Part shown: positions 1 through 35,043 of the stretch, piece by piece
Layout of the letters: each line of letters begins with the position of its first letter
Numbering within the stretch: position 1 is the stretch's first letter
Source: Macrostomum lignano
Lineage: Eukaryota
Assembly (NCBI GenBank): GCA_002269645.1
Contig: NIVC01000681.1
Coordinates: forward strand, 32,469-96,468
Direction: 5' to 3'
DNA length: 64,000 bases
Program-made: the position numbers and the translations under genes
The notes under the pieces: generated by a model
What the model was told of the DNA's origin: nothing
What the model saw: only the letters and a program-made list of their open reading frames with translations
The model's database searches: none

Positions 1-452
1 GAGATTGTTTAGGTGTGACATTGTTCAGGTGTAAGATTGTTCAGGTGTGACATTTTTCAGGTGTGAGGTTGTTCAGGTGTGAGATTGTTCTGGTGTGAGA
101 TTGTTCAGGTGTGAGGTTGTTCAGGTGTGAGATTGTTCAGGTGTGAGATTGTTCAGGTGTGAGATTGTTCAGGTGTGAGATTGTTCAGGTGTGAGATTGT
201 TCAGGTGTGAGATTGTTCAGGTGTGAGACTGTTCAGGTGTGAGATTGTTCAGGTGTGAGATTGTTCAGGTGTGAGATTGTTCAGGTGTGAGATTGTTCAG
301 GTGTGGGATTGTTCAGGTGTGAGATTTTTCAGGTGTGAGATTGTTCAGGTGTGAGATTGTTCAGGTGTAAGATTGTTCAGGTGTGAGATTGTTCAGGTGT
401 GAGATTGTTCAAGTGTGAGATTGTTCAGGTGTGAGATTGTTCAGGTGTGAGA
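1..452. repeat. 16-bp minisatellite (gagattgttcaggtgt)n, intronic
   Basis: Direct tandem copies from the window start; follows the donor of exon 629-501. Confidence 0.95.
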
Positions 453-500
453 TTTTCCTCTTATTTCTTCAGACAGGTACCAATCCAATAACCCACTTAC

Positions 501-3500
501 GACAAAGAACTCTTCTGTGTTTCACTTTTCGCTCGCATTTGCAGTTTCGCTTTCTGTAGGTCACCTTGGTAACCACCTTGGTGTTGTCAGATCTGCACTT
601 TGTCTCCGAAATAGAATTCTTTGGGCATTCTAGAAGGGAAACAAACTTGGATATATTTTTATCATGTACCATAGGCTTGTGTACCTGCAGAAATGTTAGC
701 TAGCAAACTTACTTGTGGCCTTTTTATCCACCTTTTTAGCCTTGATGCACTTTTGGCCTTTCAGCTTCTGGGTGACCGTCACCGTGATTAGCACATTACG
801 GCGGCACTTCACAGTTCGAGCGGGTTTGGGGCAAGCTGGAGAGGGGTTGTTTTGGAACATAGACACTTGAGTACATGCGCACGACCTCAAAGGGTCTGAT
901 AGCCCGCCACCCCAAAATCAACCCTCAACCCCACGGGGGTATGATAGTCCGCAAACCAACCACTCTCAACCCCACGGGGGGTCTGATACATGTAGCCCGC
1001 CACCCCAGAATCAACCCTCAACCCCACGGGGGGTATGATAGCCCGCCACCCCACCACTCTCAACCCCACGGGGGGTCTGATACATGTAGCCCGCCACCCC
1101 AGAATCAACCCTCAACCCCACGGGGGGTATGATAGCCCGCCACCCCACCACTCTCAACCCCACGGGGGGTCTGATACATGTAGCCCGCCACCCCAGAATC
1201 AACCCTCAACCCCACGGGGGGTATGATAGCCCGCCACCCCACCACTCTCAACCCCACGGGGGGTCTGATACATGTAGCTTGCCACCCCAGAATCAACCCT
1301 CAACCCCACGGGGGGTATGATAGCCCGCCACCCCACCACTCTCAACCCCACGGGGGGTCTGATACATGTAGCCCGCCACCCCAGAATCAACCCTCAACCC
1401 CACGGGGGGTATGATAGCCCGCCACCCCACCACTCTCAACCCCACGGGGGTCTGATACATGTAGCCCGCCACCCCAGAATCAACCCTCAACCCCACGGGG
1501 GTATGATAGCCCGCCACCCCACCAATCTCAACCCCACGGGGGGTCTGATACATGTAGCCCGCCACCCCAGAATCAACCCTCAACCCCACGGGGGGTATGA
1601 TAGTCCGCAAACCAACCACCCTCAACCCCACGGGGGGTATGATAGCCCGCCACCCCACCACTCTCAACCCCACGGGGGGTCTGATACATGTAGCCCGCCA
1701 CCCCAGAATCAACCCTCAACCCCACGGGGGGTCTGATAGCCCGCCACCCCACCACTTTCAACCCCACGGGGGTCTGATAGCCCGCCACCCCACCACTTTC
1801 AACCCCACGGTGGGTCTGATAGCCCGCCAGCCCCAGCCCTCACCGCATCTCCTCTTCATTTTGACTTTCTTGACCAAACAGGCGTATCGGTTCTGCGGCG
1901 GTGGCAGCAGCACAACCCGACCAATGGTGAGCTCCGTAGTCTGAAATCCAGTCTCTTTATTGCAGGGTCCCGCCTTGAGCGGCGCCATGACTGGCCGGCA
2001 CATTTTTTTCTGCTTTGTCTCGGCGGGACATTTTGTTTTTTTATCGCAACGGTTTTTTTCGCGATTCAACCGATAAACTGTGGTGCACTTTCGATTCCAT
2101 TTAAGCTTGGGATCCGGTTTCAGCTCTACTTTGGTTTTCGGGCAGCCTGCGGAAGGGATAGCAAAGATATTGAGAATCTGACATTAGGGACATTAGGACA
2201 GTAAGCCCTCATATTTAAAAAGGTATAAAATTTCATAAATCTTCCATATTTCAGAAAACCCCCACATTTCATAAATCTCCCATATTTCATAAATCTCCCA
2301 TATTTCATAAATCTCCCATATCTCAGAAATCTCCCATATTTCGGAAAATCTCCCATATTTCAGAAATCTTCCATAATTCATACATCTCCCTCATTTCAGA
2401 AATCTCCTATATGTCATAGATTTCCCATTTATAGATTTCCTTTTTCATAGCTTTCAAATATTTCATAGATTTCCCATATTTCATAGATTTCCCATATTCC
2501 ATAAATCTCCCATATTTCAAAAATGGCCCATATTTCATAACATTCCATATTTCATAAAGATCCCATATTCCATAAATCTCCCATATTTCAAAAATGGCCC
2601 ATATTTCATAAACATTCCATATTTCATAAAGATCCCATATTTCATAAATCTCCCATATTTCAAAAATGGCCCATATTTCATAAACATTCCATATTTCATA
2701 AAGATCCCATATTTCATAAATCTCCCATATTTCGGAAATCTCCCACATTTCATAAATCTCCCATATTTCGGAAATCTCCCACTATTTTAAGAACTCAGTA
2801 AAATTTTATTACGACAAATCACTCGACGCTTCTTGTGCTTTTTCACGCAGGCGCAGCTGACCAGCTTGTGATAGGTGAGGGTCACGGTCTGGTAGCCCCG
2901 CTTGCCGCAAGCCGATTTGTGCTCGCTTCTGTTCTCGTCACATTCTGTTTGAAAGAAAATAAGACTAATTAGATAACGAGGCATTCGACTTTAAAATGGC
3001 GCAGTTTTCAAGCTAATTTCAAGCCCGTGGAAACTCACTGATTGGAACGTTGGTAGTTTTGACAGTTTTTTTGCAGCGCTCGGCGCCTTCGGTGAATCGG
3101 TAGTCTCGGATCACGAAGCGTTTCTTCTTGTTTTCGCAACGCTTCGTGCGATAGTTTAATAAGTGGCAGGCTGAAATGATTTTTTTAGTTATGAATGCGG
3201 CTTCATGGTTGCCAAGGAAGGCGCTATAAACACCCCATATTATATTGTGTTGTGTTAAGAAAAGATGCTGTTTGCTAAGGGAACTAGAATCTTGTTGCTA
3301 GGGGAGGCCATACTGTTGCTAAGGCAAAAACGCCATGGTTCTAAGGTAACGACATTGTTGCTAAGGGAAAATTAGACTGTTGCTAAGGAGACACAACACT
3401 GTTGCTAAGAGAAAATCAGAATGTTGGTAAGGAGACACAACACTGTTGCTAAGGGAAAATCAGATTGTTGCTAAGGAGACACAACACTGTTGCTAAGAGA

Positions 3501-6500
3501 AAATCAGATTGTTGCTAAGGAGACACAACACTGTTGCTAAGAGAAAATCAGACTGTTGCTAAGGAGACACAACACTGTTGCTAAGAGAAAATCAGAATGT
3601 TGCTAAGGAGACACAACACTGTTGCTAAGGGAAAAACAGATTGTTGCTAAGGAGACACAACACTGTTGCTAAGAGAAAATCAGAATGTTGCTAAGGAGAC
3701 ACAACACTGTTGCTAAGAGAAAATCAGACTGTTGCTAAGGAGACACCACACTGTTGCTAAGGGAAAATCAGATTGTTGCTAAGGAGACACAACACTGTTG
3801 CTAAGGGAAAAACAGATTGTTGCTAAGGAGACACAACACTGTTGCTAAGAGAAAATCAGACTGTTGCTAAGGAGACACAACACTGTTGCTAAGGGAAAAT
3901 CAGATTGTTGCTAAGGAGACACAACACTGTTGCTAAGAGAAAATCAGACTGTTGCTAAGGAGACACCACACTGTTGCTAAGGGAAAATCAGAATGTTGCT
4001 AAGGAGACACAACACTGTTGCTAAGGGAAAATCAGATTGTTGCTAAGGAGACACAACACTGTTGCTAAGGGAAAAACAGATTGTTGCTAAGGAGACACAA
4101 CACTGTTGCTAAGGGAAAATCAGATTGTTGCTAAGGAGACACAACACTGTTGCTAAGAGAAAATCAGACTGTTGCTAAGGAGACACAACACTGTTGCTAA
4201 GAGAAAATCAGACTGTTGCTAAGGAGACACAACACTGTTGCTAAGAGAAAATCAGACTGTTGCTAAGGAGACACAACACTGTTGCTAAGGGAAAAACAGA
4301 TTGTTGCTAAGGAGACACAACACTGTTGCTAAGAGAAAATCAGAATGTTGCTAAGGAGACACAACACTGTTGCTAAGAGAAAATCAGACTGTTGCTAAGG
4401 AGACACCACACTGTTGCTAAGGGAAAATCAGATTGTTGCTAAGGAGACACAACACTGTTGCTAAGGGAAAAACAGATTGTTGCTAAGGAGACACAACACT
4501 GTTGCTAAGAGAAAATCAGACTGTTGCTAAGGAGACACAACACTGTTGCTAAGGGAAAATCAGATTGTTGCTAAGGAGACACAACACTGTTGCTAAGAGA
4601 AAATCAGACTGTTGCTAAGGAGACACAACACTGTTGCTAAGGGAAAATCAGATTGTTGCTAAGGAGACAACACACTGTTGCTAAGGGAAAATCAGATTGT
4701 TGCTAAGGAGACACAACACTGTTGCTAAGAGAAAATCAGACTGTTGCTAAGGAGACACAACACTGTTGCTAAGAGAAAATCAGACTGTTGCTAAGGAGAC
4801 ACAACACTGTTGCTAAGGGAAAATCAGATTGTTGCTAAGGAGACAACACACTGTTGCTAAGGAGACATGAGGATATTAAATTTTGTATCACGCAGCAATT
4901 TTACAGCGTAGCAACAATCTCAAACTCACCGCAAGGAATCTTTTTAACTCGAGTTCGTTTGACGCATCTGCAATTCCGGGTCTGGTGCTTCACGAACGTG
5001 ATCAGGCGCTGGCCAGCCGACCGGCCTTTCCGTGCGCCCCGGCATCGGCCGTAGATTGGGGTTTCCTCCTCCAGGCAGTCTGCAAAGTGTACAGTCAGGA
5101 ACTACTTTGCGGCTGTTTGGGGAGGACAGATGACCCTATTATTGGGGAGGTCAGCTGCCCCCTGCTCAGAGTAGAGTAGAGTAGAGGAGGTCAGCTGTCC
5201 CCTACTCAGAGTAGAGTAGAGTAAAAGTAGAGGTCATCTGCCCCCTACTCAGAGTAAAGTAGAGTAGAGTAGAGAAGGTCAGCTGTCCCCTGATCAAAAA
5301 GGGAGATTATCTTAATCCAAATTAAACAAACGTCGAGAGACAGACAGCTCGCATGACTCACAGACAGGTGTCCGTTGAAAGCTGACCGACCGCTTGCAAA
5401 CACCACGAATGAGAAGGTGCGACACTTTGACAATTTCCAAAGATCGATGCTTTACACACTTACGCCGTTTGGTAGGCTTTGGACATCCTAAAATGTGTTT
5501 TTTTCATTTATAAAAAGTTTAAATTGGTTTGTTAGAATTGAGATCATTGGTGAATAGCGGCAGATTTAAAACACCAGATATGTTTCAGCTATGGTTTTGC
5601 GGCATATCAAAAGAGCTGAAGGTGGCGGCACATCAAAAGAGAAGGAAGCGCGAAGGTGGCGGCACATCAAAGAGAAGGAAGCGAAGGTGGCGGCACATCA
5701 AAATAGAAGGAAGCGAAGGTGGCGGCACATCAAAGAGAAGGAAGCGAAGGTGGCGGCACATCAAAGAGAAGGAAGCGAAGGTGGCGGCACATCAAAGAGA
5801 AGGAAGCGAAGGTGGCGGCACATCAAAAGAGAAGGAAGCGAAGGTGGCGGCACATCAAAGAGAAGGAAGCGAAGGTGGCGGCACATCAAAATAGAAGGAA
5901 GCGAAGGTGGCGGCACATCAAAGAGAAGGAAGCGAAGGTGGCGGCACATCAAAGAGAAGGAAGCGAAGGTGGCGGCACATCAAAGAGAAGGAAGCGAAGG
6001 TGGCGGCACATCAAAAGAGAAGGAAGAGAAGGTGGCGGCACATCAAAGAGAAGGAAGCGAAGGTGGCGGCACATCAAAAGAGAAGGAAGCGAAGGTGGCG
6101 GCACATCAAAGAGAAGGAAGCAAAGGTGGCGGCACATCAAAAGAGAAGGAAGAGAAGGTGGCGGCACATCAAAGAGAAGGAAGCGAAGGTGGCGGCACAT
6201 CAAAGAGAAGGAAGCGAAGGTGGCGGCACATCAAAGATAAGGAAGCGAAGGTGGCGGCACATCAAAGAGAAGGAAGCGAAGGTGGCGGCACATCAAAGAG
6301 AAGGAAGCGAAGGTGGTGGCACATCAAAGATAAGAAAGCGAAGGTGGCGGCACATCAAAGAGAAGGAAGCAAAGGTGGCGGCACATCAAAGATAAGAAAG
6401 CGAAGGTGGCGGCACATCAAAGAGAAGGAAGCGAAGGTGGTGGCACATTAAAGATAAGAAAGCGAAGGTGGCGGCACATCAAAGAGAAGGAAGCGAAGGT

Positions 6501-9500
6501 GGCGGCACATCAAAGATAAGAAAGCGAAGGTGGCGGCACATCAAAGAAGAATAACGACATATTTTACAGATACAAGAAAAAAGCTGTTTTTTTCAGAAAT
6601 TACCAATGCTACTACTGAAATCCCAAAGTTTAAATCCCCACGCTTACGGCAGCGAAGCCGAAGCCGTTTGACCCGCTGGTGGCAGACGCATTTGCGCAGG
6701 CTGTGGTGCACCCAGGTGTCCACCCGGCTCCCGTCGGATCCGCAGCGGCCCCGGCGGTACAGCGGCTTGCTGGGGCACTCTGCAGTAGCGTTGAGGGAAA
6801 AGGGGTTGCGCTGAATTCGTGGGCTGGAGGAGAGGATGAAGCGAATGAAGATGGAGGGAGGCAGTGGGAGACAGAGAGAGTTGGAGGGAGAGAGGAGGAA
6901 GGGATATAGGCAGGTAAGAGGGAGGTATGGAGAGGGGAGAGAGGGAGAGAGGGAGAGGGGAGAGAGGGAGAGGGGGAGAGAGGGAGAGAGGGGAGAGGGG
7001 AAGAGAGGGAGAGGGAAAGAGAGGGAGAGAGGGAGAGAGGGAGAGAGGGAGAGAGTAAAGAGAGGGAGAGGGGGAGAGACGGAGAGTGGGAGAGAGGGAG
7101 AGAGTAAAGAGAGGGAGAGGGGGAGAGAGGGAGAGTGGGAGAGAGTAAAGAGAGGGAGAGGGGGAGAGAGGGAGAGTGGGAGAGAGGGAGAGAGGGAGAG
7201 AGTAAAGAGAGGGAGAGAGGGAGAGTGGGAGAGAGTAAAGAGAGGGAGAGGGGAGAGAGGGAGAGAGGGAGAGAGGGAGAGTGGGAGAGAGGGAGAGAGG
7301 GAGAGAGTAAAGAGAGGGAGAGAGGGAGAGAGGGAGAGAGTAAAGAGAGGGAGAGGGGGAGAGAGGGAGAGAGTAAAGAGAGGGAGAGGGGGACAGAGGG
7401 AGAGTGGGAGAGAGGGAGAGAGGGAGAGAGGGAGAGGGGGAGAGGGAGAGGGGGAGAGGGAGAGGGGGAGAGGGAGGCAGACACAGCAGAAGCATCCCTC
7501 ACTATTCGGTATGACTTTCTCGTCCTCCTCAGCCAGACACAGTCCGTCAACCAGCTTGTACTTGGTTGAGTAGATGGTCTCGACCTGATCAGCTGAGCAC
7601 ACCCGTCTGTGCACCGGCCTTGGACAGCCGCAGACCTCTTTGGTCCGTTTGACCACCGATTTGCACTTGCAGTTGCGCCTGCGAGTCTCTCGAGTAGTCA
7701 CTATGCGTTGCTTCTTGGTGCACTTGCCACGCTTCACCTCAAATTTCCTGGGACAGTCTGGAATGAGTAGGAGTAGATTGGCGCTGACATGGGTGACTCA
7801 GATGACTCAGGTGACACTGAATTGGGTGACTCAGGTGACTCAGGTGACACTGAATTGGGTGACTCAGGTGACACTGAATTGGGTGACTCAGGTGACACTG
7901 AATTGGGTGACTCAGGTGACACTGAATTGGGTGACTCAGGTGACACTGAATTGGGTGACTCAGGTGACACTGAATTGGGTGACTCGGGTGACACTGAAAT
8001 GGGTGAATCAGGTGACACTGAATTGGGTGACTCAGGTGACACTGAAATGGGTGACTCAGGTGACACTGAAATGGGTGACTCGGGTGACACTGAAATGGGT
8101 GACTCAGGTGACACTGAATTGGGTGACTCAGGTGACTCAGGTGACACTGAATTGGGTGACTCAGGTGACACTGAAATGGGTGACTCAGGTGACACTGAAA
8201 TGGGTGACTCAGGTGACACTGAAATGGGTGACTCAGGTGACACTGAATTGGGTGACTCAGGTGACACTGAATTGGGTGACTCAGGTGACTCAGGTGACAC
8301 TGAATTGGGTGACTCAGGTGACACTGAAATGGGTGACTCAGGTGACACTGAAATGGGTGACTCAGGTGACACTGAATTGGGTGACTCAGGTGACACTGAA
8401 ATGGGTGACTCAGGTGACACTGAATTGGGTGACTCAGGTGACACTGAATTGGGTGACTCGGGTGACACTGAATTGGGTGACTCAGGTGACACTGAATTGG
8501 GTGACTCAGGTGACACTGAAATGGGTGACTCAAACCATCATATTAAGCGCATGACAGCAGCTCAACTTACGAACTCTTCGAGTAATTTTGCACAAGTGCC
8601 CGATGCACTGGCCGTCTTTCATTTCGTATTTTTTCTCTAGCTTAACAAGGACTCCACGAATGCACCGGGTCTTTGTGCGGTTCTTTGGGCAGGCTGAAAT
8701 TCGATGAAGTAATCGATTGAATTCTGTTTTAATAACATATTTAGAGTCAATCACTTCCTACTAATCCAAAGATTTTTATAGTTTCTATGAATTCCTAATG
8801 ATTTCCATTTAGTTTTCAATAATTTTCCATGTAGTTTCCATTGGTTTCCATTTAGTTCCCATTGGTTTCCATTTAGTTCCCATTGGTTTCAATTTAGTTC
8901 CCATTGGTTTCCATTTAGTCCCCATTGGTTTCAATTTAGTTCCCATTGGTTTCCATGTAGTTCCCAGTGGTTTCCATTTAGCTCCCATTGGTTTCCATTT
9001 AGCTCCCATCGGTTTCCCTTTAGTGATCAAAAAGAAAAGGAAAACTAAAAACAACAAAATAGAAATACAGTTAATTTTATAGCATGCTACTCATAATAAG
9101 TAGGTCTTACCGCATCGCACCTGCCGGTTGTAGACGCGTTTCAAGCATTTGCAGTTGTAAGGATAATAATTAACGTAGGTCTTCGTGCGCCATCCTTTTA
9201 CGCAATCCGAGGATTTCACTGTGTTTTCGCCACACTCTGTAGTGGTGAAAAAAGTAGGCAACAAAAAAACACTTTTTACTTTTAAAAATGTAAGTTGAGA
9301 AATGTAAATTATTGCTCACTGATTCGTACAACAGAAGTGGTTCGCTTCAGGAGGCACCTGCCATCAACCAGGTGTTGCACATATCGATGCTTATAAACTC
9401 GATTGCCGCGGCATTCATGCTCGATTCGAGATTTTTCGCAACCTGAAATCGATTGTTTTTGAAAAACAATAAATACTACTATTAGTAGGAAAAAGTAGCA

Positions 9501-12500
9501 AGAATTTTTATTTCGTTACAAAGCTTTTTTAAATACGAAAATATTTAAACTCAAAAAATTACCCAATACTACTAAGAATAGATCAAAAAGGTTGAAAAAA
9601 TAGAATAACTATTACTATCGAATACTACTATAAGTAGATAAAAGCAGCAAAAAAGATAACGAAATACTAAATATCTGAATAGGTGGGATATTTCAGCGAC
9701 AGCTGATCCGAATCCATCGAGAGTTTTTATAGTCATTCCCCAGGGTGCACAGCGTTGATTATGTGAAATGGAAATTTTCCGTAAACAAAATCTAACCCGG
9801 CTATAGTGCCTTAACTCCATGCTATATTATTTTCCCTAAGAATCGCTACCATGAGTAGCTAAAATCGAAAGACGTACGGCACCGCTCCCGATGCGAAGTC
9901 ACCCTGGTAACGCAGACGCAGTCGCGAGCCTCTTCAACGAGCTGTCGAACAACTCGATAGCCGTCAGATTGACAGCGAGACACCCGCCTGTGCAGCTTGC
10001 CCCGGCACTCTGCGATGGTGGTAGATTAAAGCTAGCTAGAAAGTAATAAAAAAGTACAAATACTAGCTGAGTTCTAGTTTGTAGTAGCTTACTAATTGGT
10101 TTCTTGCGTACAGCGACGCTGCGCTTGCAGGCGGACTTGGCGCCGTCCATTTTGTGGGTGACGGCTTTCACAATCCAGACATTGTCGTCGCACTTCTCGG
10201 TTGTGTAGTCCTTGCCGCAGCCTGGCGTTGTTATTGCTTATTTAAATAGTTAAGGCCGAATATTTTTAAGTAGAAAACTATTGACTAACCAGTCAAACAC
10301 GCCACCCCACTCTGCCCCGCTCAACAGCCACCCCACTTCCTGCCCTATTTAACACCCACCCCACTCCATGCCCCATTTAACACCCACCCCACTCCCTGCC
10401 CCATTTAACACTCACCCACTCCATGCCCCATTTAACACCCACCCCACTCCCTGCCCCATTTAACACTCACTCACTCCATGCCTCATTTAACACCCACCCC
10501 ATTCCCTGGCATGTTCAACACCAACCTACTCTCTGCCCAAAAGTGCGCCAACTCACCGCACTTCTCGTAGGTGATCCGCCTCCGCTTAACGCACTCGCAG
10601 CCCCGTCTCTCCTGATTGTACAAAATCACCCGACGGTAGCCGTTGAAAGCGCACGAACTTTTCACCGGCCGATACTTTTTGTTGCAGACTAAATATGGTA
10701 CAGCATGGGGGATACTTTCAATGCTAAGAAAGGTAGGTAAAACAGGTGAAATATAAAGGTCACTCACCAATTGGCTTCTTAGTGACCTTGACCTTCTCCT
10801 TGCAGCGCCCGCCTCGAAGTTGAAACCTACGAACCATGGAGTGCAGAACGCTACCCCGGCAGTAGCTGTTGCGCTGCGGCTTCGGACAGCCTGTTTCCAT
10901 TGACACCGCAAAATCGATATCATTTCTAAGCCCTAATAAAAGTACAAGTTACTAATGAAAAACTCACAGCACTTGACAGTTCGCTTTTTAACGGGTCTGA
11001 CGCAACGACAATTGCGAACTTCCGCCCAGGTTTCAGTCACCGTCTGGCTGCAGTCCGCTCTGCAGCTTGATCGCGACTTCACTCGGTTCTTTGGGCAAGC
11101 TGGGTTGGATTGCGATGCTTATACTAGTTACTCCGTATGTCTTAGCTTACAGTACACTGCCCGCTTCAACTACATGTATGCACCACTGTCACTTGCTATT
11201 CTGCGCCTACCTCACTTCCTGCCCCTCATCTACACCCACCTCACTTCCTGCCCCTCATCTACACCCACCTCACTCCCTGGCCCTATCCTGTACCTGTACC
11301 CACCTCACTCCCTGCCCTATTCTGTACCTGTACCCACCTCACTCCCTGCCCTATTCTGTACCTGTACCCACCTCACCCCCTGCCCTATTCTGTACCTGTA
11401 CCAACCTCACTCCCTGCTCTATTCTGTACCTGTACCAACCTCACTCCCTGCTCTTTTCTGTATCTGTACCCACTTCACTCCCTGTCTTTCCTCTGCACCC
11501 ACCTCACTCCCTCCCCCTCATTTGCGCCCACTTCACTCCCTGCCCCTCATTTGCGCCCACCTCACTCCCTGCCTCTTTTCTGCACCCACCTCACTCCCTG
11601 CCTCTTTTCTGCACCCACCTCACTCCCTGCCGGTTTTCTGCACCCACATCACTCCCTATCCCTATTCTGCACCCACATCACTCCCTATCCCTATTCTGCA
11701 CCCACATCACTCCCTATCCCTATTCTGCACCCACATCTCTCCCTATCCCTATTCTGCACCCACATAACTCCCTATCCCTATTCTGCACCCACATCACTCC
11801 CTATCCCTATTCTGCACCCACATCACTCCCTATCCCTATTCTGCACCCACATCACTCCCTATCCCTATTCTGCACCCACATCACTCCCTATCCCTATTCT
11901 GCACCCACATCTCTCCCTATCCCTATTCTGCACCCACATAACTCCCTATCCCTATTCTGCAGCCACATAACTCCCTATCCCTATCCTGCATCCACGTCCC
12001 TCCCTATCCCTATCCTGCATCCACATCACTCCCTATCTCTTTTCTGCACCCACCTCACTCCCTGCCTATCTTCTACACCCACCTCACTCCTTGCCCCCCA
12101 TTTGCACCCACCTCACACATTGTCCCTTCTCTGCACCCACCTCACTCCTTACTCAAAAAGCATAATAAAACTCACATATGGGAATTCGCTTAACTTTAGT
12201 CTCAACTTTGCAAGAGTTTCGCTTCAGCCGGTAAACAGTGCTAATACGCATTTTCACATTGCCGTCGCACCTGGTTCGCACCTTCGTCTTCGGACAGGCT
12301 GAAGTGTGAAGAGTTTTCGAGTAACTAATGCACAACATGAGCTAGAGTCAGAGTCAGGCACAACCGTGAGCGGACTCACCGCAGCGAACTCGGACACGTT
12401 TTCTAGTAGTCCGACACCGGCAATTCCTGTAGGTGGTGCGCAGCTCAGTGACTGTCATGAACAGACCCCGACAGGTGCCGGGTTTCTTGCGCACTCCAAC

Positions 12501-12676
12501 GGTGCAGTCGGGCTTCAATGCTACCTGCTTTGTGTAGGCTGTGCACGCGAAATTCACTACCTTCTCGCCAGACTCAATCCGATACAGACTGTTATCGATG
12601 CAGCGGGTGCGTTGGGTTGCCGGCTTGCACTCTGGGATTGATTGATTGATTGACTGATTCGATTGACTGATTGATA

Positions 12677-12711
<35 letters not shown>

Positions 12712-12740
12712 TGATTGATTGATTAGTTTGATTAATTGAC

Positions 12741-12799
<59 letters not shown>

Positions 12800-12824
12800 T
12801 TAATTAAATGGTTGATTGGTTGAC

Positions 12825-12863
<39 letters not shown>

Positions 12864-12901
12864 TTAATTAAATGGTTGATTGGTTGACTGATTGATTGAT
12901 A

Positions 12902-12969
<68 letters not shown>

Positions 12970-13126
12970 ATAGATTATTAGATTGATTGATTAGTTTGAT
13001 TAATTGATTGATTAATTGATTGATTGATTATTCGATTGATTGATTTGATTGATTGATTAGTTTGATTAATTGACTGATTGATTGATTGATTGACTGATTG
13101 ATTGATTAATTGATTGGTTGATTGAT

Positions 13127-13203
<77 letters not shown>

Positions 13204-13204
13204 C

Positions 13205-13253
<49 letters not shown>

Positions 13254-13276
13254 CTGATTCGATTGACTGATTGATA

Positions 13277-13315
<39 letters not shown>

Positions 13316-13344
13316 TGATTGATTGATTAGTTTGATTAATTGAC

Positions 13345-13405
<61 letters not shown>

Positions 13406-13428
13406 AATTAAATGGTTGATTGGTTGAC

Positions 13429-13467
<39 letters not shown>

Positions 13468-13505
13468 TTAATTAAATGGTTGATTGGTTGACTGATTGAT
13501 TGATA

Positions 13506-13573
<68 letters not shown>

Positions 13574-13724
13574 ATAGATTATTAGATTGATTGATTAGTT
13601 TGATTAATTGATTGATTGATTATTCGATTGATTGATTTGATTGATTGATTAGTTTGATTAATTGACTGATTGATTGATTGATTGACTGATTGATTGATTA
13701 ATTGATTGGTTGATTGATCGATTG

Positions 13725-13779
<55 letters not shown>

Positions 13780-13780
13780 C

Positions 13781-13839
<59 letters not shown>

Positions 13840-13938
13840 ATTCGATTGATTTGATTGATTGATTAGTTTGATTAATTGACTGATTGATTGATTGGTTGAT
13901 TGATTGATTGATTAATTGATTGGTTGATTGATCGATTG

Positions 13939-14033
<95 letters not shown>

Positions 14034-16882
14034 TATTGATTTATTGATTGATTTATTGATTGATTGATTCGATTGATTGATTGATTGATTGAATTATTGA
14101 TTGATTAATTGGTTGGTTGACTAACTGACTTACTGACTGAAAGATTTTCTATCTTATAAATGAATTTTTCCACGTAAACAAGTACTTTAAATTATACTTT
14201 CCGAGAAGCGTTAGACAATTTATGCAGCAATTTTACCTGGAGTGCATCGTTTCTTAGTGCTGAGCTTTCGCCTCTTGCACACGCAGTCGTCAAGGTAGAC
14301 AGTCAGGCTGGTCTCGATGCGGTAGCCGCTGCGACTGCACTTGGTGCGGCTGTACTTGGTGCCGATAGGGCAGTTCCGGTCTGGAGGGGAACAGCAAAGG
14401 ATGGAGGAGGCTGCAAGCGGGGAAGCTGAAGTAAATACCTTTAGCGACTTCACCCGACAAACAAGCGCTGACTTCTGAGCACAATACCAGCAAGCCAAAT
14501 ACGGTACAGTACGCAGGCACGCACTCATGGACACGCTCACACAGGGCACTGAGACCCCATCAGCAGTAGATTCGGGCAGTTCTCACCAGCTCGAGTCCGC
14601 TTGACTTTTTTCTTCCTGGAGCAGCTGTCTCCCTCATAGCTGATGGTGGTGAGGTACAGAATCCGGCCAGAGATGCAGTGCCTCACGTGACGAGTCTTGG
14701 GACACGTGACTCCCACAGAGCCGTCTGCTGATCCTTCGGAGCTTGCTGTGAGAGAAAAATGTATGAGATGCATGCAGGGGGAGAATGGCTGCTGCCCCCT
14801 CCCCTCAGACCCCTCAGTGGCTGCTGCCCCCTCCCCTCAGACCCCTCAGTGGCTGCTGCCCCTCCCCTCAGACCCTTCAGTGCCTGCTGCCCCTCCCCTC
14901 AGACCCTTCAGTGCCTGCTGCCCCTCCCTCAGACCCTTCAGTGCCTGCTGCCCCTCCCTTCAGACCCTTCAGTGCCTGCTGCCCCTCCCCCCAGACCCTT
15001 CAGTGCCTGCTGCCCCTCCCCTCAGATCCTTCAGTGCCTGCTGCCCCTCCCCTCAAACCCTTCAGTGCCTGCTGCCCCTCAACCCCAGATCCTTCAGTGC
15101 TTGCTGCCCCTCCCCTCAGATCCTTCAGTGCCTGCTGCCCCTCCCGTCAGACCCTTCAGTGCCTGCTGCCCCTCCCCTCAGATCCTTCAGTGCCTGCTGC
15201 CCCTCCCCTCAGATCCTTCAGTGCCTGCTGCCCCTCCCCTCAGATCCTTCAGTGCCTGCTGCCCCTCCCCTCAGATCCTTCAGTGGCTGCTGCCCCTCCC
15301 GTCAGACCCTTCAGTGGCTGCTGCCCCTCCCCTCAGATCCTTCAGTGCCTTCTGCCCCTCAACCCCAGATCCTTCAGTGGCTGCTGCCCCTCCCCTCAGA
15401 CCCTTCAGTGCCTGCTGCCCCTCAACCCCAGATCCTTCAGTGGCTGCTGCCCCTCCCCTCAGACCCTTCAGTGCCTGCTGCCCCTCAACCCCAGATCCTT
15501 CAGTGGCTGCTGCCCCTCCCCTCAGATCCTTCAGTGACTGCTGCCCTCCCCTCAGATCCTTCAGTGCCTGCTGCCCCTCAACCCCAGATCCTTCAGTGCC
15601 TGCTGCCCCTCAACCCCAGATCCTTCAGTGACTGCTGCCTTTTCCCCTTAATTTTCGACTTGCTTTCAAATTAAAACTGGACAGAACGAAAAATGAGACA
15701 AAGAACAATGCACTATTAGTAAACTCAGTCTGATGTTGATGTCATTTGCTAGAGCAAATGAAATTAATTGTTTCAGTGGAGATCAAGATTGATAGATCGG
15801 TAATAATTACAAAAAATCAAAAAGTACAAAATGCTCTCTAACTCGAATTTCGGCCGGAAGATGGAGGTACGGGCGCAGGTGCCGCGGCGGGAGCGGAGGC
15901 TTTAGCGGAGACGAAAGCAGCTGCAGCAGGGGCCTTCGCCTTCGCCTTCCCCTTGTCCGGCTTAGGCTCGACCGCTTCGCCCAAAAGTTCATCCATGCTG
16001 GCTCCCATGTAGCCTGCGGGATAGCCGCCCAGCGTAGAAACTGGCATCTGTTTCCTTTTTCCTCAGGCCACTTGCTGCCTACATATGCACCTGTAGCTGT
16101 ATTGGCCCACTACATTTAGAATAGATTTTCCAAGGTGAGGAATGGCTGTTTAGGTAGTGGACAGGATAATTAAGATAGTTAGTCACAAGAACAGGTGTCA
16201 CGCACGGCTTTAAGACGTAATTTAATACTCAGTAGTATAGTAAGTAACCTTCAAGTATGAATAAGTATGAATACATACAACTATTTGATACAGGTGTGAG
16301 GCGTGGCTATAAAGATAATTAAGATATAATTAACCAATTGATAAAGGTGCGAGAAGCGGCTATAAAGGTAATTAAGGTAATTATTCAATTAATACAGGTG
16401 CGAGAAACGGCTAGCTCGTATAAAGGTAATTAAAAATTAGATACAGGTGTAATACACGGCTATAAAGGTAATTGATCATTACATGCAGGTGCGAGACACG
16501 GTTTTAAATATAATTAAGATAATTAATCAATTAATACAAGTGAGAGACTGATCAGATGGGTAATTTAATTTAAAATTGAGAGAATTAGCTAGCACAAAAG
16601 TATGATAATAAACTAGAAGAGTGCTAAACACAGATATTGCACTGTTGATAATAAGGGTACATGTAAACATATAACCAGTCAATGCCCAGAGGAGACCATC
16701 ATAGTATAGTGTCTAGGAGAAAAGCAATGAAATCCTTGACCCAGAACTGGCTCACCATCCGAAGCGAATGACTGCTGTACAGCGCAGCACAGCACAGCCG
16801 CCAGGATGAAGATAAGAGACAGCCTGCGCCATACCGCAAATGGTGCGGCGGCTTCCAACTTCAAAGCTGCTGCAGACACCAT
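501..16882 (-). CDS. Secreted modular Cys/Lys/Arg-rich repeat protein, multi-exon; 3' end lies beyond the left edge (>=~1175 aa in window)
   Basis: Hand-spliced exons (minus): 16882-16756 (MVSAA...LIFILAAVLCCAVQQSFASD, signal-peptide-like), ~16061-15843 (weak acceptor), 14745-14587, 14380-14237, 12631-12380, 12298-12176, 11099-10968, 10890-10768, 10688-10557, 10221-10093, 10009-9878, 9442-9320, 9236-9111, 8693-8571, 7757-7503, 6779-6648, 5487-5362, 5079-4930, 3170-3039, 2944-2813, 2146-1844, 835-713, 629-501. All have GT..AG boundaries, internal exons are multiples of 3, the frame stays open, and each encodes CP(K)x..C..C or C..C..CxC..C modules. Confidence 0.85.
890..1835. repeat. Composite minisatellite with 94-bp period (two related ~47-bp subunits), fills intron 1843-836
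   Basis: Repeated agcccgccacccc...ctcaaccccacggggg; identical ORFs recur at 94-nt offsets (1011, 1105, 1199, 1293). Confidence 0.95.
2215..2782. repeat. Degenerate ~18-19-bp minisatellite (ataaatctcccatatttc)n
   Basis: Tandem copies inside intron 2812-2147. Confidence 0.9.
3330..4865. repeat. 44-bp dimeric minisatellite (ctgttgctaaggagacacaaca / ctgttgctaagagaaaatcaga)
   Basis: Alternating 22-bp subunits inside intron 4929-3171. Confidence 0.95.
5155..5285. repeat. Short degenerate repeat (agagtagagtagaggaggtcagctgtcccctactc)
   Basis: About 3 imperfect copies in intron 5361-5080. Confidence 0.7.
5615..6547. repeat. 31-32-bp minisatellite (gaaggtggcggcacatcaaagagaaggaagc)n
   Basis: Tandem copies in intron 6647-5488; source of several spurious ORFs. 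Confidence 0.95.
6870..7475. repeat. GA-rich low-complexity tract (gagaggga)n
   Basis: Polypurine tract in intron 7502-6780. Confidence 0.95.
7790..8532. repeat. 24-bp minisatellite (gggtgactcaggtgacactgaatt)n
   Basis: Tandem copies in intron 8570-7758. Confidence 0.95.
8805..9020. repeat. 21-bp minisatellite (ccattggtttccatttagttc)n
   Basis: Tandem copies in intron 9110-8694. Confidence 0.9.
10300..10510. repeat. ~28-bp repeat (aacacccaccccactccatgccccattt)n
   Basis: About 6-7 imperfect copies in intron 10556-10222. Confidence 0.85.
11200..12150. repeat. ~29-bp minisatellite (ctgcacccacatcactccctatccctatt)n with divergent flanking variants
   Basis: Tandem copies in intron 12175-11100. 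Confidence 0.9.
12636..14135. repeat. (GATT)n microsatellite, ~1.5 kb
   Basis: Fills intron 14236-12632 and abuts the acceptor. Confidence 0.95.
14785..15640. repeat. ~31-bp minisatellite (cccctcagatccttcagtgcctgctgcccct)n
   Basis: Tandem copies in intron 15842-14746; unit resembles the adjacent acceptor/exon junction. Confidence 0.95.
16190..16570. repeat. Old degenerate repeat (atacaggtgcgagaaacggctataaaggtaattaa-like)
   Basis: Recurrent caggtg..cggct.taaa motifs in the first intron. Confidence 0.65.
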
Positions 16883-17807
16883 TTAACACAGGTCCTGTCG
16901 CTAACTACAGCTGAATCAGACTATTAATAAACTTCTAAAGCATACAATGCAACTGAAGAAAGCTAACAATTTATCTAGAACCTAAAGAGCTAATTGCAGA
17001 GCTACTCTCGGCTAGCGAGAAAATTCCTCTAACAGCTGTTCAACAGAAGAAGTCGACACTTGAGCTGGACTATCTGAAGATCTGGAGCTAAAATATGCAT
17101 ACTCGAGAGGATGAGGAGTTTTAGATCCCAGAAAGGAAGGTCGAAAGAAAAACTAAAGAATTTTTTTCGTTAATAAAGAGTGGCTATACTTTTAGCACCA
17201 CAGCAGGAGTTATTGCTAAATGCCAATTTTATCATTTTTTGAGATCCAATGAGTAAGACAAGTGGAAAGAGTCGAGCTGTCACTCAGACTATTCAGGTGC
17301 CTTCAGAATAGCAAATTCCAAAACTGTGCATTAATACTACGGAAATTTTGTTGGCCATTTTTATCGATTGAAAGCAACTTGCAATTTTTTTAGTCCTGGC
17401 CAAAAATTCAGGGGAGGGGGCAGATTAAACCATAAATTACAATACGCTCGATAGTATTGACTATAGCATTTTCCAATCCAGAGCAAGCAATTTAATCCTT
17501 ATTGGGAGAATCAAGCTATTGAAGACTTGTTTCTCATTGTCAATGGCCAAAAGGGGGTCTATGGAGCAACCAATCTGGGCGCGCAATTAAGCCTTTTCAC
17601 AGTGCTCGTGTATCCTTTATGAATAACTTCACTGAAATAACGTCTGCAAATAGATGGCATATCAAAAAACGATTGACATCAACACTTTGATTTCAGAGAA
17701 ACCAATCAAAACAGGCAAAGGCAAAACCATGGCATACAGTATAAGCCGACAACAATCGTGTCTCTCAAAACAGTGTTGAACAGATTGAAATCAAACCCGA
17801 TCAATGT

Positions 17808-18360
17808 TCAGAGATTTTCTTCCTCATTTAAGCAGCGCGGGATAATGCGAAGCATCTGCCGAAACCAGCCGCCGCATTTGGCTACTGTGATCTCAGCCGT
17901 TGCCTCCTCCGCAATCCGATGAAGAACGATCGTACGCGCCACTCGAGCAGTGTTGTCTCTGGCGGTGGATTGTCCAATTCGATTTGCACCTGTGGCTGCG
18001 CAAGTTGCCGCTTGATGGCCGCCTTCAAACAGGAATGCGGCCATACTACAACCTGCCAGTTCAGCTCAAACTGCTGGGGGATCCTCAGCCCGTCATGATG
18101 ACTAAGAAGTTGTCGGCATTGTCTACATCATCTCGATTGTTGACAGCATGGAGCAGCTCCTCGACAAATGTGTGACCGACAATCTTGTGGTGTACCAAGC
18201 CGAGATTTGGTGCCACTGTCTGCAGGACATTGACCTGAACCCCTCGCTGCATGTCCAAAACACGTCGGACTCGCTGGCCACGTCTGCTGCGTCCTTGGGA
18301 CCGGCGAGTCCAAATGTTGAAACCGGTCTCATCAACATAGATGAGGCGACGTTCAGGTGG
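17808..18360 (-). mobile_element. Decayed IS630/Tc1-mariner (DDE_3-type) transposase fragment
   Basis: Minus-strand translation LIYVDETGFNIWTRRSQGRSRRGQR...RGVQVNV...GLVHH (first catalytic D) and C-terminal EEATAEITVAKCGGWFRQMLRIIPRCLNEE; frameshifts and a deletion around the YSPxLNPIE region. Confidence 0.75.
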
Positions 18361-18789: not shown

Positions 18790-19772
18790 TATAATAAAGC
18801 TAATCAAAGCCACTGCCAAAAATTGGCCATAGACAATAAAGCCAATCAAAGCTACTGCCACAAATCGGCCATAGACAATAGAGCCAATCAAAGCCACTTC
18901 CACAAATCGGCCATAGACAATAAAGCCAATCAAAGCCACTGCCACAAATCAGCCATAGACAATAGAGCCAATCAAAGCCACTGCCACAAATCAGCCATAG
19001 ACAATAGAGCCAATCAAAGCCACTGCCACAAATCGGCCATAGACAATAGAGCCAATCAAAGCCACTGCCACAAATCGGCCATAGACAATAAAGCCAATCA
19101 AAGCCAGTGCCACAAATCAGCCATAGACAATAAAGCCAATCAAAGCCACTGCCACAAATCGGCCATAGACAATAAAGCCAATCAAAGCCACTGCCACAAA
19201 TCGGCCATAGACAATAAAGCCAATCAAAGCCACTGCCACAAATCGCCCATAGACAATAAAGCCAATCAAAGCCACTGCCACAAATCGCCCATAGACAATA
19301 AAGCCAATCAAAGCCACTGCCACAAATCGGCCATAGACAATAAAGCCAATCAAAGCCACTGTCACAAATCGGCCATAGACAATAAAGCCAATCAAAGCCA
19401 CTGCCACAAATCGCCCATAGACAATAAAGCCAATCAAAGCCACTGCCACAAATCGGCCATAGACAATACAGCCAATCGAAGCCACTGCCACAAATCGGCC
19501 ATAGACAATACAGCCAATCAAAGCCACTGCCACAAATCGGCCATAGACAATAAAGCCAATCAAAGCCACTGCCACGAATCGGCCATAGACAATAAAGCCG
19601 ATCAAAGCCACTGCCACAAATCGGCCATAGACAATACAGCCAATCAAAGCCACTGCCACAAATCGGCCATAGACAATACAGCCGATCAAAGCCACTGCCA
19701 CAAATCGGCCATAGACAATAAAGCCAATCAAAGCCACTGCCACAAATCGGCCATAGACAATAAAGCCAATCC
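18790..19772. repeat. 42-bp minisatellite (gccatagacaataaagccaatcaaagccactgccacaaatcg)n
   Basis: About 23 near-identical copies, intergenic. Confidence 0.95.
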
Positions 19773-35000: not shown

Positions 35001-35043
35001 CTTTAGTTTTGATTGACAGTGGGAAATATGCATGCATTGGCAT
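29049..35043 (-). CDS. C14orf93-like domain protein, paralogue B (~450-460 aa, 5 exons)
   Basis: Exons 35043-34732, 34382-33914, 32466-32348, 32156-32061, 29444-29049 join in frame. Shares with A the N-terminal FSPLTMFECT..MLIDSM motif, TTLRKAYRVL..FDF, and the last exon KLNRRQKAY...RDYTSSDEED..LRVRELTWESEELRQLKNRLD...SDRPAP..DWA. Exons 3-4 are less certain. Confidence 0.7.
29530..30355. repeat. ~22-23-bp minisatellite (ctacaggctattaggacattagc)n
   Basis: Tandem copies in the last intron of paralogue B. Confidence 0.9.
30830..31370. repeat. 21-bp minisatellite (ttttagcgccgcaggcactca)n
   Basis: Tandem copies in the last intron of paralogue B. Confidence 0.95.
31500..31670. repeat. Dispersed repeat, copy 1 (homologous to 32895-33070)
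   Basis: Shared colinear blocks aagaagc.tccc.gag, gtaaaataggaaa.aagtgact, agatgtcacggt.caag.cgccaa. Confidence 0.7.
32895..33070. repeat. Dispersed repeat, copy 2
   Basis: Same blocks as 31500-31670; runs directly into the 22-bp array at 33075. Confidence 0.7.
33075..33862. repeat. 22-bp minisatellite (ctcacatgaatcagagtcacat)n
   Basis: Tandem copies in intron 33913-32467. Confidence 0.95.
34462..34720. repeat. ~20-bp minisatellite (ccactgttgcttccctcccc)n
   Basis: Fills the first intron of paralogue B, starting just after the donor. Confidence 0.9.

What the first reader, a model, noticed from the sequence alone, without database searches (positions are those of the whole stretch)
501..16882. 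Giant secreted protein of strictly alternating 3-Cys / 5-Cys basic modules
Seen: after a signal peptide and an Ala/Pro/Lys linker, the protein alternates module A (C-P-K-x~6-C-x~18-C, e.g. ACPKNRTKTRC...DGQC) with module B (C..C..CxC..C, e.g. KCPKNSISETKC...RNCKC..VLC). There are about 12 AB dyads of ~85 aa, most with 8 Cys, very Lys/Arg-rich and divergent in sequence but fixed in Cys spacing. It lacks the Trp motifs of TSP1 and I cannot assign it to a named domain. Inference: a disulfide-stapled, beta-hairpin-rich, polycationic fibre such as an adhesive, cement, eggshell or matrix component. I recall similar CCCPKP-type repeats in unannotated flatworm proteins but cannot verify this.
Basis: partly seen in the sequence, partly recalled or inferred. 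Interest (0 to 1): 0.75.

Follow-up and report, generated by a model that had tools for sequence, protein, structure and literature searches.

The report
Flatworm polycationic cysteine-repeat secreted protein
The region holds the first half of a real Macrostomum lignano (flatworm) gene for a secreted, very basic protein made of tandem 8-cysteine all-beta units from an undescribed repeat family found so far only in flatworms, free-living and parasitic; what it does has not been tested.

Summary
On the minus strand, 16882 to 501, 23 GT-AG exons, every internal one in phase 1-1, encode a signal peptide, an uncertain Ala/Pro/Lys linker exon and 12 strictly alternating A (3-Cys) and B (5-Cys) modules.

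The window is 100% identical to M. lignano contig NIVC01000681.1. The gene is BOX15_Mlig022069g3 (PAA78532.1, 2,136 aa) and continues 22.6 kb past the window start. The full protein has 18 AB dyads, one extra A module, VWD-C8, and two ShKT domains.

- **Known families:** the dyad has no Pfam, PDB-sequence or Foldseek match. It gives no profile similarity to TSP1 or CTCK domains.
- **Fold:** AlphaFold2 predicts an all-beta fold (pLDDT 93.5). Each module is one short strand plus a long hairpin. A covarying optional cysteine pair (p = 1e-25) supports the B hairpin.
- **Origin:** A and B are diverged copies of one ~42-aa module.
- **Charge:** about +18.6 per dyad, pI about 10.2.
- **Distribution:** a profile search of 1.84 billion proteins found 55 relatives. 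Every named one is a flatworm, up to 5,275 aa.

It is neither Mlig-ap1 nor Mlig-ap2. I infer a disulfide-stapled polycation that is cross-linked through VWD-C8 and binds polyanions in a secretion or matrix. Expression site and function remain untested.

The parts
16756..16882 (-). Exon 1. ATG at 16882. Signal-peptide-like N-terminus MVSAAALKLEAAAPFAVWRRLSLIFILAAVLCCAVQQSFA/SD. Phase-1 donor GTGAGC.
   Evidence: Start of NCBI model PAA78532.1. The signal peptide is read from the sequence (basic n-region, hydrophobic core, SFA cleavage-like motif) and was not run through a predictor.
15843..16013 (-). Possible Ala/Pro/Lys linker exon (...KPDKGKAKAKAPAAAAFVSAKASAPAAAPAPVPP...). 171 nt, phase 1-1, weak donor GTTAGA.
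   Evidence: Included in UniProt A0A1I8IWZ4 and skipped in NCBI PAA78532.1, so inclusion is unresolved.
14587..14745 (-). Exon A1 (module A, 3 Cys).
   Evidence: A-module HMM E = 9e-5
14237..14380 (-). Exon B1 (module B, 5 Cys, CxC).
   Evidence: B-module HMM E = 1e-10
12380..12631 (-). Fused exon A2B2.
12176..12298 (-). Exon A3.
   Evidence: E = 2e-15
10968..11099 (-). Exon B3. It carries the optional extra Cys (CRADC), matched by a CC junction to the next dyad.
10768..10890 (-). Exon A4.
10557..10688 (-). Exon B4.
10093..10221 (-). Exon A5. The polypyrimidine tract before its acceptor is weak.
   Evidence: Present in both public models.
9878..10009 (-). Exon B5.
9320..9442 (-). Exon A6.
9111..9236 (-). 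Exon B6.
8571..8693 (-). Exon A7.
7503..7757 (-). Fused exon B7A8.
6648..6779 (-). Exon B8.
5362..5487 (-). Exon A9.
4930..5079 (-). Exon B9.
3039..3170 (-). Exon A10.
2813..2944 (-). Exon B10.
1844..2146 (-). Fused exon A11B11, a divergent dyad of 101 aa with the CxC motif lost.
   Evidence: Dyad HMM gives only 15 bits, E = 8e-5.
713..835 (-). Exon A12.
501..629 (-). Exon B12. It ends in the phase-1 donor GTAAGT at 501, and the gene continues beyond the window start.
   Evidence: The continuation is seen in L001 26883-49468.

Best explanation
The region is the 5' 55% of BOX15_Mlig022069g3, a Macrostomum lignano gene for a 2,136-aa secreted protein.

**Shown**
- After the signal peptide come 18 back-to-back AB dyads and one extra A module, with no linkers between them.
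- Each dyad is about 85 aa, has 8 conserved Cys and carries about +18.6 net charge.
- A and B are diverged copies of one module of about 42 aa.
- The protein ends in a VWD-C8 assembly and two ShKT domains.
- The dyad belongs to an undescribed family, seen so far only in Platyhelminthes.

**Predicted**
- Each module is a short strand plus a long beta hairpin, held by disulfides.
- A has 3 Cys and B has 5, so at least one disulfide must link the two modules. This would make the dyad the structural unit.

**Inferred**
- The chain forms an extended, protease-resistant, unglycosylated polycationic rod.
- The rod is disulfide cross-linked or multimerised through its C-terminal VWD-C8 region, as in mucins, VWF and invertebrate adhesive proteins.
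- It binds polyanions such as sulfated glycans, glycocalyx or mucus electrostatically.
- It would therefore act as a cohesive or matrix component of a glandular secretion. The logic is the same as for the cohesive protein Mlig-ap1, but with a folded rather than a low-complexity cationic region.
For: - **Gene model and identity:**. The window is 100% identical to NIVC01000681.1, and two independent public models join the same exons.
- **Dyad conservation and significance:**
- **A and B related:** hhalign probability 94.8%, E = 5e-8.
- **Fold:** AlphaFold2 gives pLDDT 93.5 for a dyad, with strands 6-12, 15-26, 29-40, 47-51, 58-69 and 72-83. The same pattern repeats in a two-dyad model with pLDDT 89.8.
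- **Independent check on the fold:** an extra Cys 2-5 residues after the second Cys of B occurs together with an extra Cys just after the last Cys of B in 34 of 34 cases. Without the first, the second occurs in only 8 of 109 cases (Fisher p = 1e-25). This is what is expected if those two positions face each other at the base of the predicted hairpin.
- **Charge:** K+R 301 against D+E 81 in the window-encoded part, pI 10.2-10.3, and only 2 N-glycosylation sequons in the 1,564 aa of repeats.
- **C-terminal domains:** VWD E = 1e-27, C8 E = 4e-8, and ShK in 2 stretches at 20.7 bits against a cutoff of 20.9.
- **Mlig-ap1 precedent:** cationic K/R flanks plus VWD-C8-TIL. Heparin blocks attachment and cations block release (PMC6410801; PMC9229212).
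- **D-assembly polymerisation in mucins and VWF:** established knowledge (Javitt et al. 2020, listed but not read).
Against: - No expression site, proteomic detection or phenotype is known. Six tryptic peptides of the protein were absent from the held (truncated) mass-spectrometry tables of footprints and tails. The gene id was absent from three papers' supplements and from all searchable main texts.
- Wunderer et al. state that no further adhesive candidates were found in M. lignano.
- The family also occurs in parasitic flatworms that lack duo-gland adhesive organs. Those relatives are much less basic (K+R about 15%, D+E about 11%). The ancestral role may therefore be general matrix, and the polycationic character is specific to this lineage.
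- A single C-terminal VWD-C8 is not proof of multimerisation.
- The rod shape and the disulfide map are not measured, because I had no access to model coordinates.
Confidence: 0.45

Rival explanations
1. It is a general extracellular-matrix, basement-membrane or surface-coat protein. The dyad family would be a flatworm-specific structural matrix module, and this gene a Macrostomum paralogue with the same role rather than a gland product. The charge would serve to bind heparan-sulfate-like matrix glycans.
For: The family is kept across Macrostomorpha, Cestoda, Trematoda and Monogenea as very large proteins with 20-48 dyads, some with VWA, and with PAN-like and ShKT-like cysteine segments that I read by eye in the printed relatives. 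These are typical matrix-protein architectures. An Echinococcus member was auto-named collagen alpha-3(VI) because of its VWA domain.
Against: This gene has a different C-terminus (VWD-C8-ShKT, with no VWA or PAN) and is far more basic than the parasite proteins. VWD-C8 is more typical of secreted gels and adhesives than of basement membranes. No localisation data exist for any member.
Confidence: 0.25
2. It is a reproductive secretion, for example egg cement or shell-gland product, prostate or seminal-fluid component, or mating-related material.
For: M. lignano has cement, shell and prostate glands with many uncharacterised secreted products (PMC5977470 and PMC4490696, listed). Basic, cysteine-rich repeat proteins build other egg coverings, such as avian CREMP.
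Against: Nothing like a VWD protein appears in the BLAST summary table of the seminal-fluid screen. No identifier match was found. Flatworm eggshell precursors are classically Tyr/Gly-rich and quinone-tanned rather than Cys-rich (my own knowledge).
Confidence: 0.15
3. It is a defensive or antimicrobial mucus component. Arrays of cationic, disulfide-stapled beta hairpins would bind microbial surfaces, and the ShKT domains would add toxin-like activity.
For: Very high positive charge on beta-hairpin modules. Two ShKT domains at the C-terminus. VWD-C8 could anchor it in a mucus gel.
Against: There is no amphipathic pattern, no processing sites between dyads, and no similarity to any defensin or toxin family. 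ShKT domains are common in non-toxic worm matrix proteins (my own knowledge).
Confidence: 0.1
4. It is an annotation artefact or pseudogene, in which open frames among repeats are wrongly joined.
For: The two public models disagree at the 5' end and on the linker exon. The introns are crowded with minisatellites that create long spurious ORFs.
Against: There are 23 exons with intact frames, uniform phase 1-1 and canonical splice sites. Cys is conserved at 95% or more across 215 dyads from many species. Module hits occur only on one strand of this gene. Homologues occur on intron-free contigs that look like transcripts.
Confidence: 0.03

Closest known systems
Mlig-ap1, the cohesive protein of the M. 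lignano duo-gland adhesive (Wunderer et al. 2019, PMC6410801)
   Same: Same species. It is secreted and large. It combines a very long Lys/Arg-rich cationic region with a VWD-C8(-TIL) assembly. The proposed action is electrostatic binding to anionic glycans.
   Different: The cationic regions of Mlig-ap1 are low-complexity Gly/Arg/Lys repeats (KSRKVN occurs 84 times) with few Cys. Here the cationic region is made of folded 8-Cys dyads, and KSRKVN occurs 0 times. Mlig-ap1 also has a C-type lectin and 17 EGF domains, is 5,407 aa long and lies on another scaffold. The two are not homologous in the repeat region.
Thrombospondin type-1 repeats, and the midkine/pleiotrophin domains with a similar fold
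   Same: Small, elongated, three-stranded antiparallel modules stapled by disulfides, rich in Arg/Lys and binding sulfated glycans. This is my own knowledge of those families, set against the predicted strand pattern.
   Different: There is no WxxW or CSxTCG motif and the Cys spacing differs. Pfam TSP_1 gave no hit at E up to 10. hhalign against seven TSP1 repeats of Mlig-ap2 gave 0.07% probability. Foldseek did not retrieve any such structure.
C-terminal cystine-knot (CTCK) domains of mucins and VWF
   Same: Module B (C-x9-10-C-x3-G-x12-13-CxC-x10-C) looks like the second finger of a CTCK. One dyad-only fragment carries the automatic name 'CTCK domain-containing'.
   Different: There is no CxGxC ring motif, so no knot is possible. 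No Pfam cystine-knot hit was found. hhalign against the Mlig-ap2 CTCK gave 0.12% probability.
Gel-forming mucins, VWF and echinoderm Sfp1-type adhesive proteins (VWD-C8-TIL D assemblies)
   Same: The C-terminal VWD (E = 1e-27) and C8 (E = 4e-8) lie outside the window. These modules drive disulfide-linked assembly of secreted polymers.
   Different: There is only one D assembly, placed at the C-terminus. There is no Pro/Thr/Ser mucin region. The bulk of the protein is a different, unnamed repeat.
[quoted passage not shown]
   Same: A structural secreted protein made of many tandem disulfide-rich modules, each with an N-terminal loop over a small beta hairpin, and about 10% Cys.
   Different: CREMP modules have 4 Cys (pairs 1-3 and 2-4) and flexible linkers. 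No sequence relation was found. The comparison is an analogy only.

Membership tests
Unnamed flatworm AB-dyad repeat family (defined here) | An 8-Cys pattern C-P-x7-C-x18-C-x12-C-x9-10-C-x16-17-CxC-x10-C in tandem, linker-free copies. | tested here: met
   12 dyads in the window and 18 in the full protein, with E = 1e-11 to 1e-25 each. The same eight Cys are at least 95% conserved in 215 non-identical dyads.
Unnamed flatworm AB-dyad repeat family (defined here) | Restricted to Platyhelminthes. | tested here: inconclusive
   There were 55 hits at E <= 1e-3 among 1.84 billion representatives. Of the 20 looked up, every one with an organism name is a flatworm. Planarians and schistosomes were not specifically checked.
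Thrombospondin type-1 repeat (Pfam TSP_1) | A match to the family profile, and the WxxW / CSxTCG motifs. | tested here: not met
   No Pfam hit at E up to 10. hhalign probability 0.07%. Trp is 0.4% of residues.
Cystine-knot / CTCK | CxGxC plus CxC ring-forming motifs, and a match to cystine-knot profiles. | tested here: not met
   CxGxC is absent from the consensus. No Pfam hit was found. hhalign probability 0.12%.
VWFA-domain proteins (the source name of A0A1I8IWZ4) | A von Willebrand factor type A domain. | tested here: not met
   No VWA hit in P0001, P0002 or P0003 at E up to 10. A distant relative, P0011, does have VWA (E = 3e-20).
VWD-C8-TIL D-assembly proteins (mucin/VWF type) | VWD followed by C8 and TIL. 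| tested here: met
   VWD E = 1e-27 and C8 E = 3.8e-8 in the C-terminal part outside the window. TIL itself was not detected, and only a weak EGF_3-like Cys stretch was seen (E = 0.02).
VWD-C8-TIL D-assembly proteins (mucin/VWF type) | Disulfide-linked multimerisation. | not testable with these tools
   This needs non-reducing gels or electron microscopy of the native or recombinant protein.
ShKT domain proteins | A six-Cys ShK-like domain. | tested here: inconclusive
   Pfam ShK matched in 2 stretches, E = 6e-4, 20.7 bits against a cutoff of 20.9. The ...C-x3-C-x2-C ending (CRRTCGLC) is visible twice in the sequence.
Mlig-ap1 (M. lignano adhesion protein 1) | Low-complexity GRK repeat flanks (KSRKVN 84 times), C-type lectin, VWD-C8-TIL, 17 EGF domains, 5,407 aa, scaf1170. 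| tested here: not met
   KSRKVN occurs 0 times in the model and in all 72 family proteins. No lectin or EGF array is present, and the protein is 2,136 aa. The ap1 sequence itself was not available for alignment.
Mlig-ap2 (M. lignano adhesion protein 2) | 255-aa and 221-aa repeats, TSP1 repeats, 14,794 aa. | tested here: not met
   The ap2 sequence read from the paper's supplement has unrelated repeats. Its TSP1 and CTCK parts show no profile similarity to the dyad.

The most novel reading that the evidence does not exclude
The AB dyad may be a new extracellular fold specific to flatworms, building rigid rods stapled by four disulfides per dyad. On this reading, the giant orthologues in tapeworms, flukes and monogeneans (20-48 dyads plus VWA, PAN and ShKT) form a core matrix or surface component special to the phylum. 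The highly cationic Macrostomum paralogue with VWD-C8 would be an unrecognised cohesive component of a secretion, such as egg cement, mucus or rhabdites, or a missed part of the temporary adhesive.
Probability: 0.3. Interest if true: 0.7.

Novelty: new variant of a known kind. Interest (0 to 1): 0.55.

Why it matters
Large modular secreted proteins with cysteine-rich repeats and a VWD assembly are a familiar kind of protein. The repeat used here is not familiar. It has no Pfam model, no solved or similar structure and no literature, and its database entries carry misleading automatic names (VWFA, CTCK, collagen VI).

Three things would follow from defining it:
- Dozens of very large flatworm proteins, including ones from Echinococcus, Paragonimus and Dicrocoelium, would get a correct annotation.
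- Bioadhesion research in M. lignano, which has RNAi, in situ hybridisation and transgenesis, would gain a testable candidate. This is a folded polycation that could be compared directly with the low-complexity polycation of Mlig-ap1.
- Protein designers would gain a compact, confidently predicted, disulfide-stapled beta module.

Tried and rejected
- **Pfam:** scans of my model, single dyads, P0001, P0002, P0003, P0008, P0011, P0012 and P0015 found nothing for the repeat.
- **PDB sequence profile search:** only a chance hit at E = 1.4.
- **Foldseek against the PDB, one-dyad and two-dyad models:** only long hairpins of GFP barrels, E >= 0.05, TM 0.2-0.35.
- **hhalign against TSP1 repeats and the CTCK of Mlig-ap2:** no similarity.
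- **Identity with Mlig-ap1 or Mlig-ap2:** rejected.
- **Optional Cys at the tip of the A hairpin (column 28) paired with the optional Cys in B (column 58):** not supported. They co-occur in only 3 dyads.
- **Expression and literature hunt:** the gene and accession ids occur in no searchable text. Six tryptic peptides are absent from the truncated Wunderer mass-spectrometry tables. The VWD-annotated transcripts there are other proteins. There was no match in the supplements of PMC5977470, PMC7336406 or PMC5816591, and no supplement is held for PMC10786194.
- **Tool failures:**
  - A second word-indexed search with a diverse 29-dyad alignment returned nothing, although members are in the database.
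  - A seven-row alignment of overlapping double dyads was misregistered by MAFFT. I replaced it with four non-overlapping ones.
Full report
**What is in the sequence.** The minus strand between 16882 and 501 carries short open segments. Each segment encodes one or two cysteine modules. Scanning for splice sites gave one consistent solution. It has 23 exons with GT-AG borders. Every internal exon is a multiple of three in length and in phase 1-1.

Exon 1 (16882-16756) starts at an ATG and encodes a signal-peptide-like sequence. A possible 171-nt Ala/Pro/Lys linker exon lies at 16013-15843. After it come A1, B1 through A12, B12 in strict alternation. Three exons hold two modules each (A2B2, B7A8, A11B11). 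The last exon in the window ends at 501 in a GTAAGT donor in phase 1, so the gene continues beyond the window.

About 70% of the intronic DNA is minisatellite arrays, usually one array per intron. These arrays account for the many long spurious ORFs.

**Identity.** The conceptual protein is 100% identical to UniProt A0A1I8IWZ4 of Macrostomum lignano. The same 90% cluster holds NCBI PAA78532.1 (BOX15_Mlig022069g3, 2,136 aa).

Window 1-26882 is 100% identical to contig NIVC01000681.1 of assembly GCA_002269645.1. On that contig the gene spans 39.5 kb, of which 22.6 kb lie beyond the window start.

The two public models agree on every module exon. They differ at the 5' end:
- The UniProt model adds upstream exons and includes the linker exon.
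- The NCBI model starts at the ATG at 16882 and skips the linker exon.

**The repeat.** The 12 dyads in the window are 83-101 aa long and 23-38% identical to one another. Seven Cys columns are invariant and the eighth is nearly so. The full protein has 18 complete dyads placed end to end with no linkers (aa 56-1619), followed by one more A-type module.

In 215 non-identical dyads from the whole family, the eight Cys are at least 95% conserved. The consensus is CPkp-x5-C ... y.L..g.C ... v.Cp ... g.C...g.r.vt ... nCkCv ... C.

A and B are related to each other (hhalign probability 94.8%, E = 5e-8). The first, second and third Cys of A align with the first and second Cys of B and with the second Cys of its CxC motif. 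The dyad is therefore a duplicated module of about 42 aa, in which B gained two cysteines. A has an odd number of Cys, so at least one disulfide must leave the module. This fits the dyad being the structural unit, but it is an inference.

As a control, module HMMs run against all six frames of the 64-kb window hit only this gene's exons.

**Predicted structure.** AlphaFold2 with the other dyads as the alignment gave pLDDT 93.5 and pTM 0.57. The model is all beta. In each module a short strand is followed by a hairpin of two 12-residue strands. A two-dyad model repeats the same pattern with pLDDT 89.8 and pTM 0.50.

There is independent support from optional cysteines. An extra Cys 2-5 residues after the second Cys of B is always accompanied by an extra Cys right after the last Cys of B (a CC or CCC junction). 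This holds in 34 of 34 cases, against 8 of 109 when the first extra Cys is absent (p = 1e-25). Those two positions sit opposite each other at the base of the predicted B hairpin.

I could not read the model coordinates. The disulfide map and the overall shape therefore remain inferences.

**Not a known domain.**
- Pfam found nothing in the repeats at E up to 10.
- A PDB sequence-profile search gave only a chance hit.
- Foldseek against the PDB gave nothing below E = 0.05. The matches were the long hairpins of GFP barrels, at TM 0.2-0.35.
- Profile comparison with seven TSP1 repeats and with the CTCK of Mlig-ap2 gave probabilities of 0.07% and 0.12%.
- The automatic source names 'VWFA domain-containing' and 'CTCK domain-containing' for dyad-only fragments have no Pfam support.

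**The rest of the protein.** Outside the window, the C-terminus has VWD (E = 1e-27), C8 (E = 4e-8), a weak EGF/TIL-like Cys stretch and two ShK-like domains.

**The family.** A profile search of 1.84 billion representative proteins found 55 with E <= 1e-3 and 23 with E <= 1e-10. I looked up 20 of them. Every one that carries an organism name is a flatworm:
- M. lignano paralogues Mlig008915 and Mlig019034.
- Cestodes: Echinococcus granulosus (5,275 aa, mis-named collagen alpha-3(VI)) and Sparganum proliferum.
- Trematodes: Echinostoma caproni, Paragonimus kellicotti and Dicrocoelium dendriticum.
- Monogeneans: Protopolystoma xenopodis and Cichlidogyrus casuarinus.

A second-iteration HMM counts up to 48 dyads per protein. 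Some relatives have a VWA domain. By eye, the printed relatives also contain PAN-like and ShKT-like cysteine segments.

The parasite proteins are only mildly basic. The Macrostomum proteins and some unnamed transcripts are extremely basic.

**Charge.** The window-encoded mature part has 301 K+R against 81 D+E and a pI of 10.3. The repeat region of the full protein carries +334 net charge, about +18.6 per dyad. It has only two N-glycosylation sequons in 1,564 aa.

**Relation to known M. lignano adhesive proteins.** Mlig-ap1 is a 5,407-aa cohesive protein. Its cationic regions are low-complexity Gly/Arg/Lys repeats (KSRKVN 84 times) flanking a C-type lectin, VWD-C8-TIL and 17 EGF domains. Mlig-ap2 is a 14,794-aa protein with 255-aa and 221-aa repeats and TSP1 domains (PMC6410801; PMC9229212).

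The present protein has none of these repeats and a different architecture. It is a distinct gene. It does share the design logic of Mlig-ap1, which is a long polycation joined to VWD-C8. In that system heparin blocks attachment and cations block release. This is the precedent for the electrostatic mechanism proposed here.

**Function.** I found no direct evidence:
- The gene and accession identifiers occur in no searchable paper.
- Six tryptic peptides are absent from the held, truncated mass-spectrometry tables of footprints and tails.
- Three supplements searched by gene id or by likely BLAST annotation terms gave nothing.

The best-supported reading is a secreted, disulfide-stapled polycationic repeat protein that is cross-linked through VWD-C8 and binds polyanions in a secretion or matrix. 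Which secretion or matrix is open. The rivals are listed with their tests.

**Verdict.** The flatworm recollection is correct. The functional class (adhesive, cement, eggshell or matrix) is plausible but untested.

The gene is already in public databases as a hypothetical protein. What is new is the definition of the dyad as an undescribed repeat family found so far only in flatworms.

Noticed in passing
window 1-16882, introns of the gene: 1-454, 900-1821, 2230-2787, 3312-4862, 5618-6547, 6917-7476, 7834-8532, 8802-9024, 10296-10538, 11196-12148, 12636-14120, 14789-15639: About 70% of the intronic DNA is minisatellite arrays, mostly one distinct array per intron. Periods run from 4 to 94 bp with up to 368 copies. 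Similar arrays continue elsewhere in the window, for example at 18793-19771. They generate many long spurious ORFs on both strands.
   Followed up: partly
window 16756-18028, minus strand: The two public gene models disagree at the 5' end. UniProt A0A1I8IWZ4 adds upstream coding exons (for example within 17882-18028) and enters exon 1 at an internal acceptor near 16858, which buries the signal peptide. NCBI PAA78532.1 starts at the ATG at 16882. The linker exon 16013-15843 is present only in the UniProt model.
   Followed up: partly
P0001, P0002 and P0008 (database entries for this gene and its copies): The automatic names 'VWFA domain-containing protein' and 'CTCK domain-containing protein' are attached to fragments that consist only of dyads. 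Pfam finds neither domain in them. The Echinococcus relative is named 'Collagen alpha-3(VI) chain'.
   Followed up: yes
window 49203-49640 and 50666-51010, plus strand: A neighbouring gene appears to encode a secreted protein. It has a hydrophobic N-terminus, a weak PAN_1 match (E = 0.003) and a NedA-like galactose-binding domain (E = 3e-8).
   Followed up: partly
window 26256-27092, 33825-34403 and 34489-35043, minus strand: These are long ORFs with no Pfam match. The first and third share an N-terminal motif (...F/LT.FE.T...A.ML.DSM..ELL...), which suggests two paralogous genes of unknown function.
   Followed up: no
window 54412-55395 and 55495-56145, minus strand: Two further long ORFs (327 and 216 aa) in a GC-rich stretch have no Pfam match.
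   Followed up: no
L001 31556-32219, minus strand (outside the window, in an intron of the gene): The source annotation calls a 210-aa gene on the opposite strand inside an intron of Mlig022069g3. It has no Pfam hit on record.
   Followed up: no
family alignment: In some relatives the A position is occupied by a B-type module, with CxC plus a terminal Cys. The two extra Cys columns co-occur (17 dyads, p = 1e-5). Dyads can therefore be 5+5 as well as 3+5, and the total stays even.
   Followed up: partly
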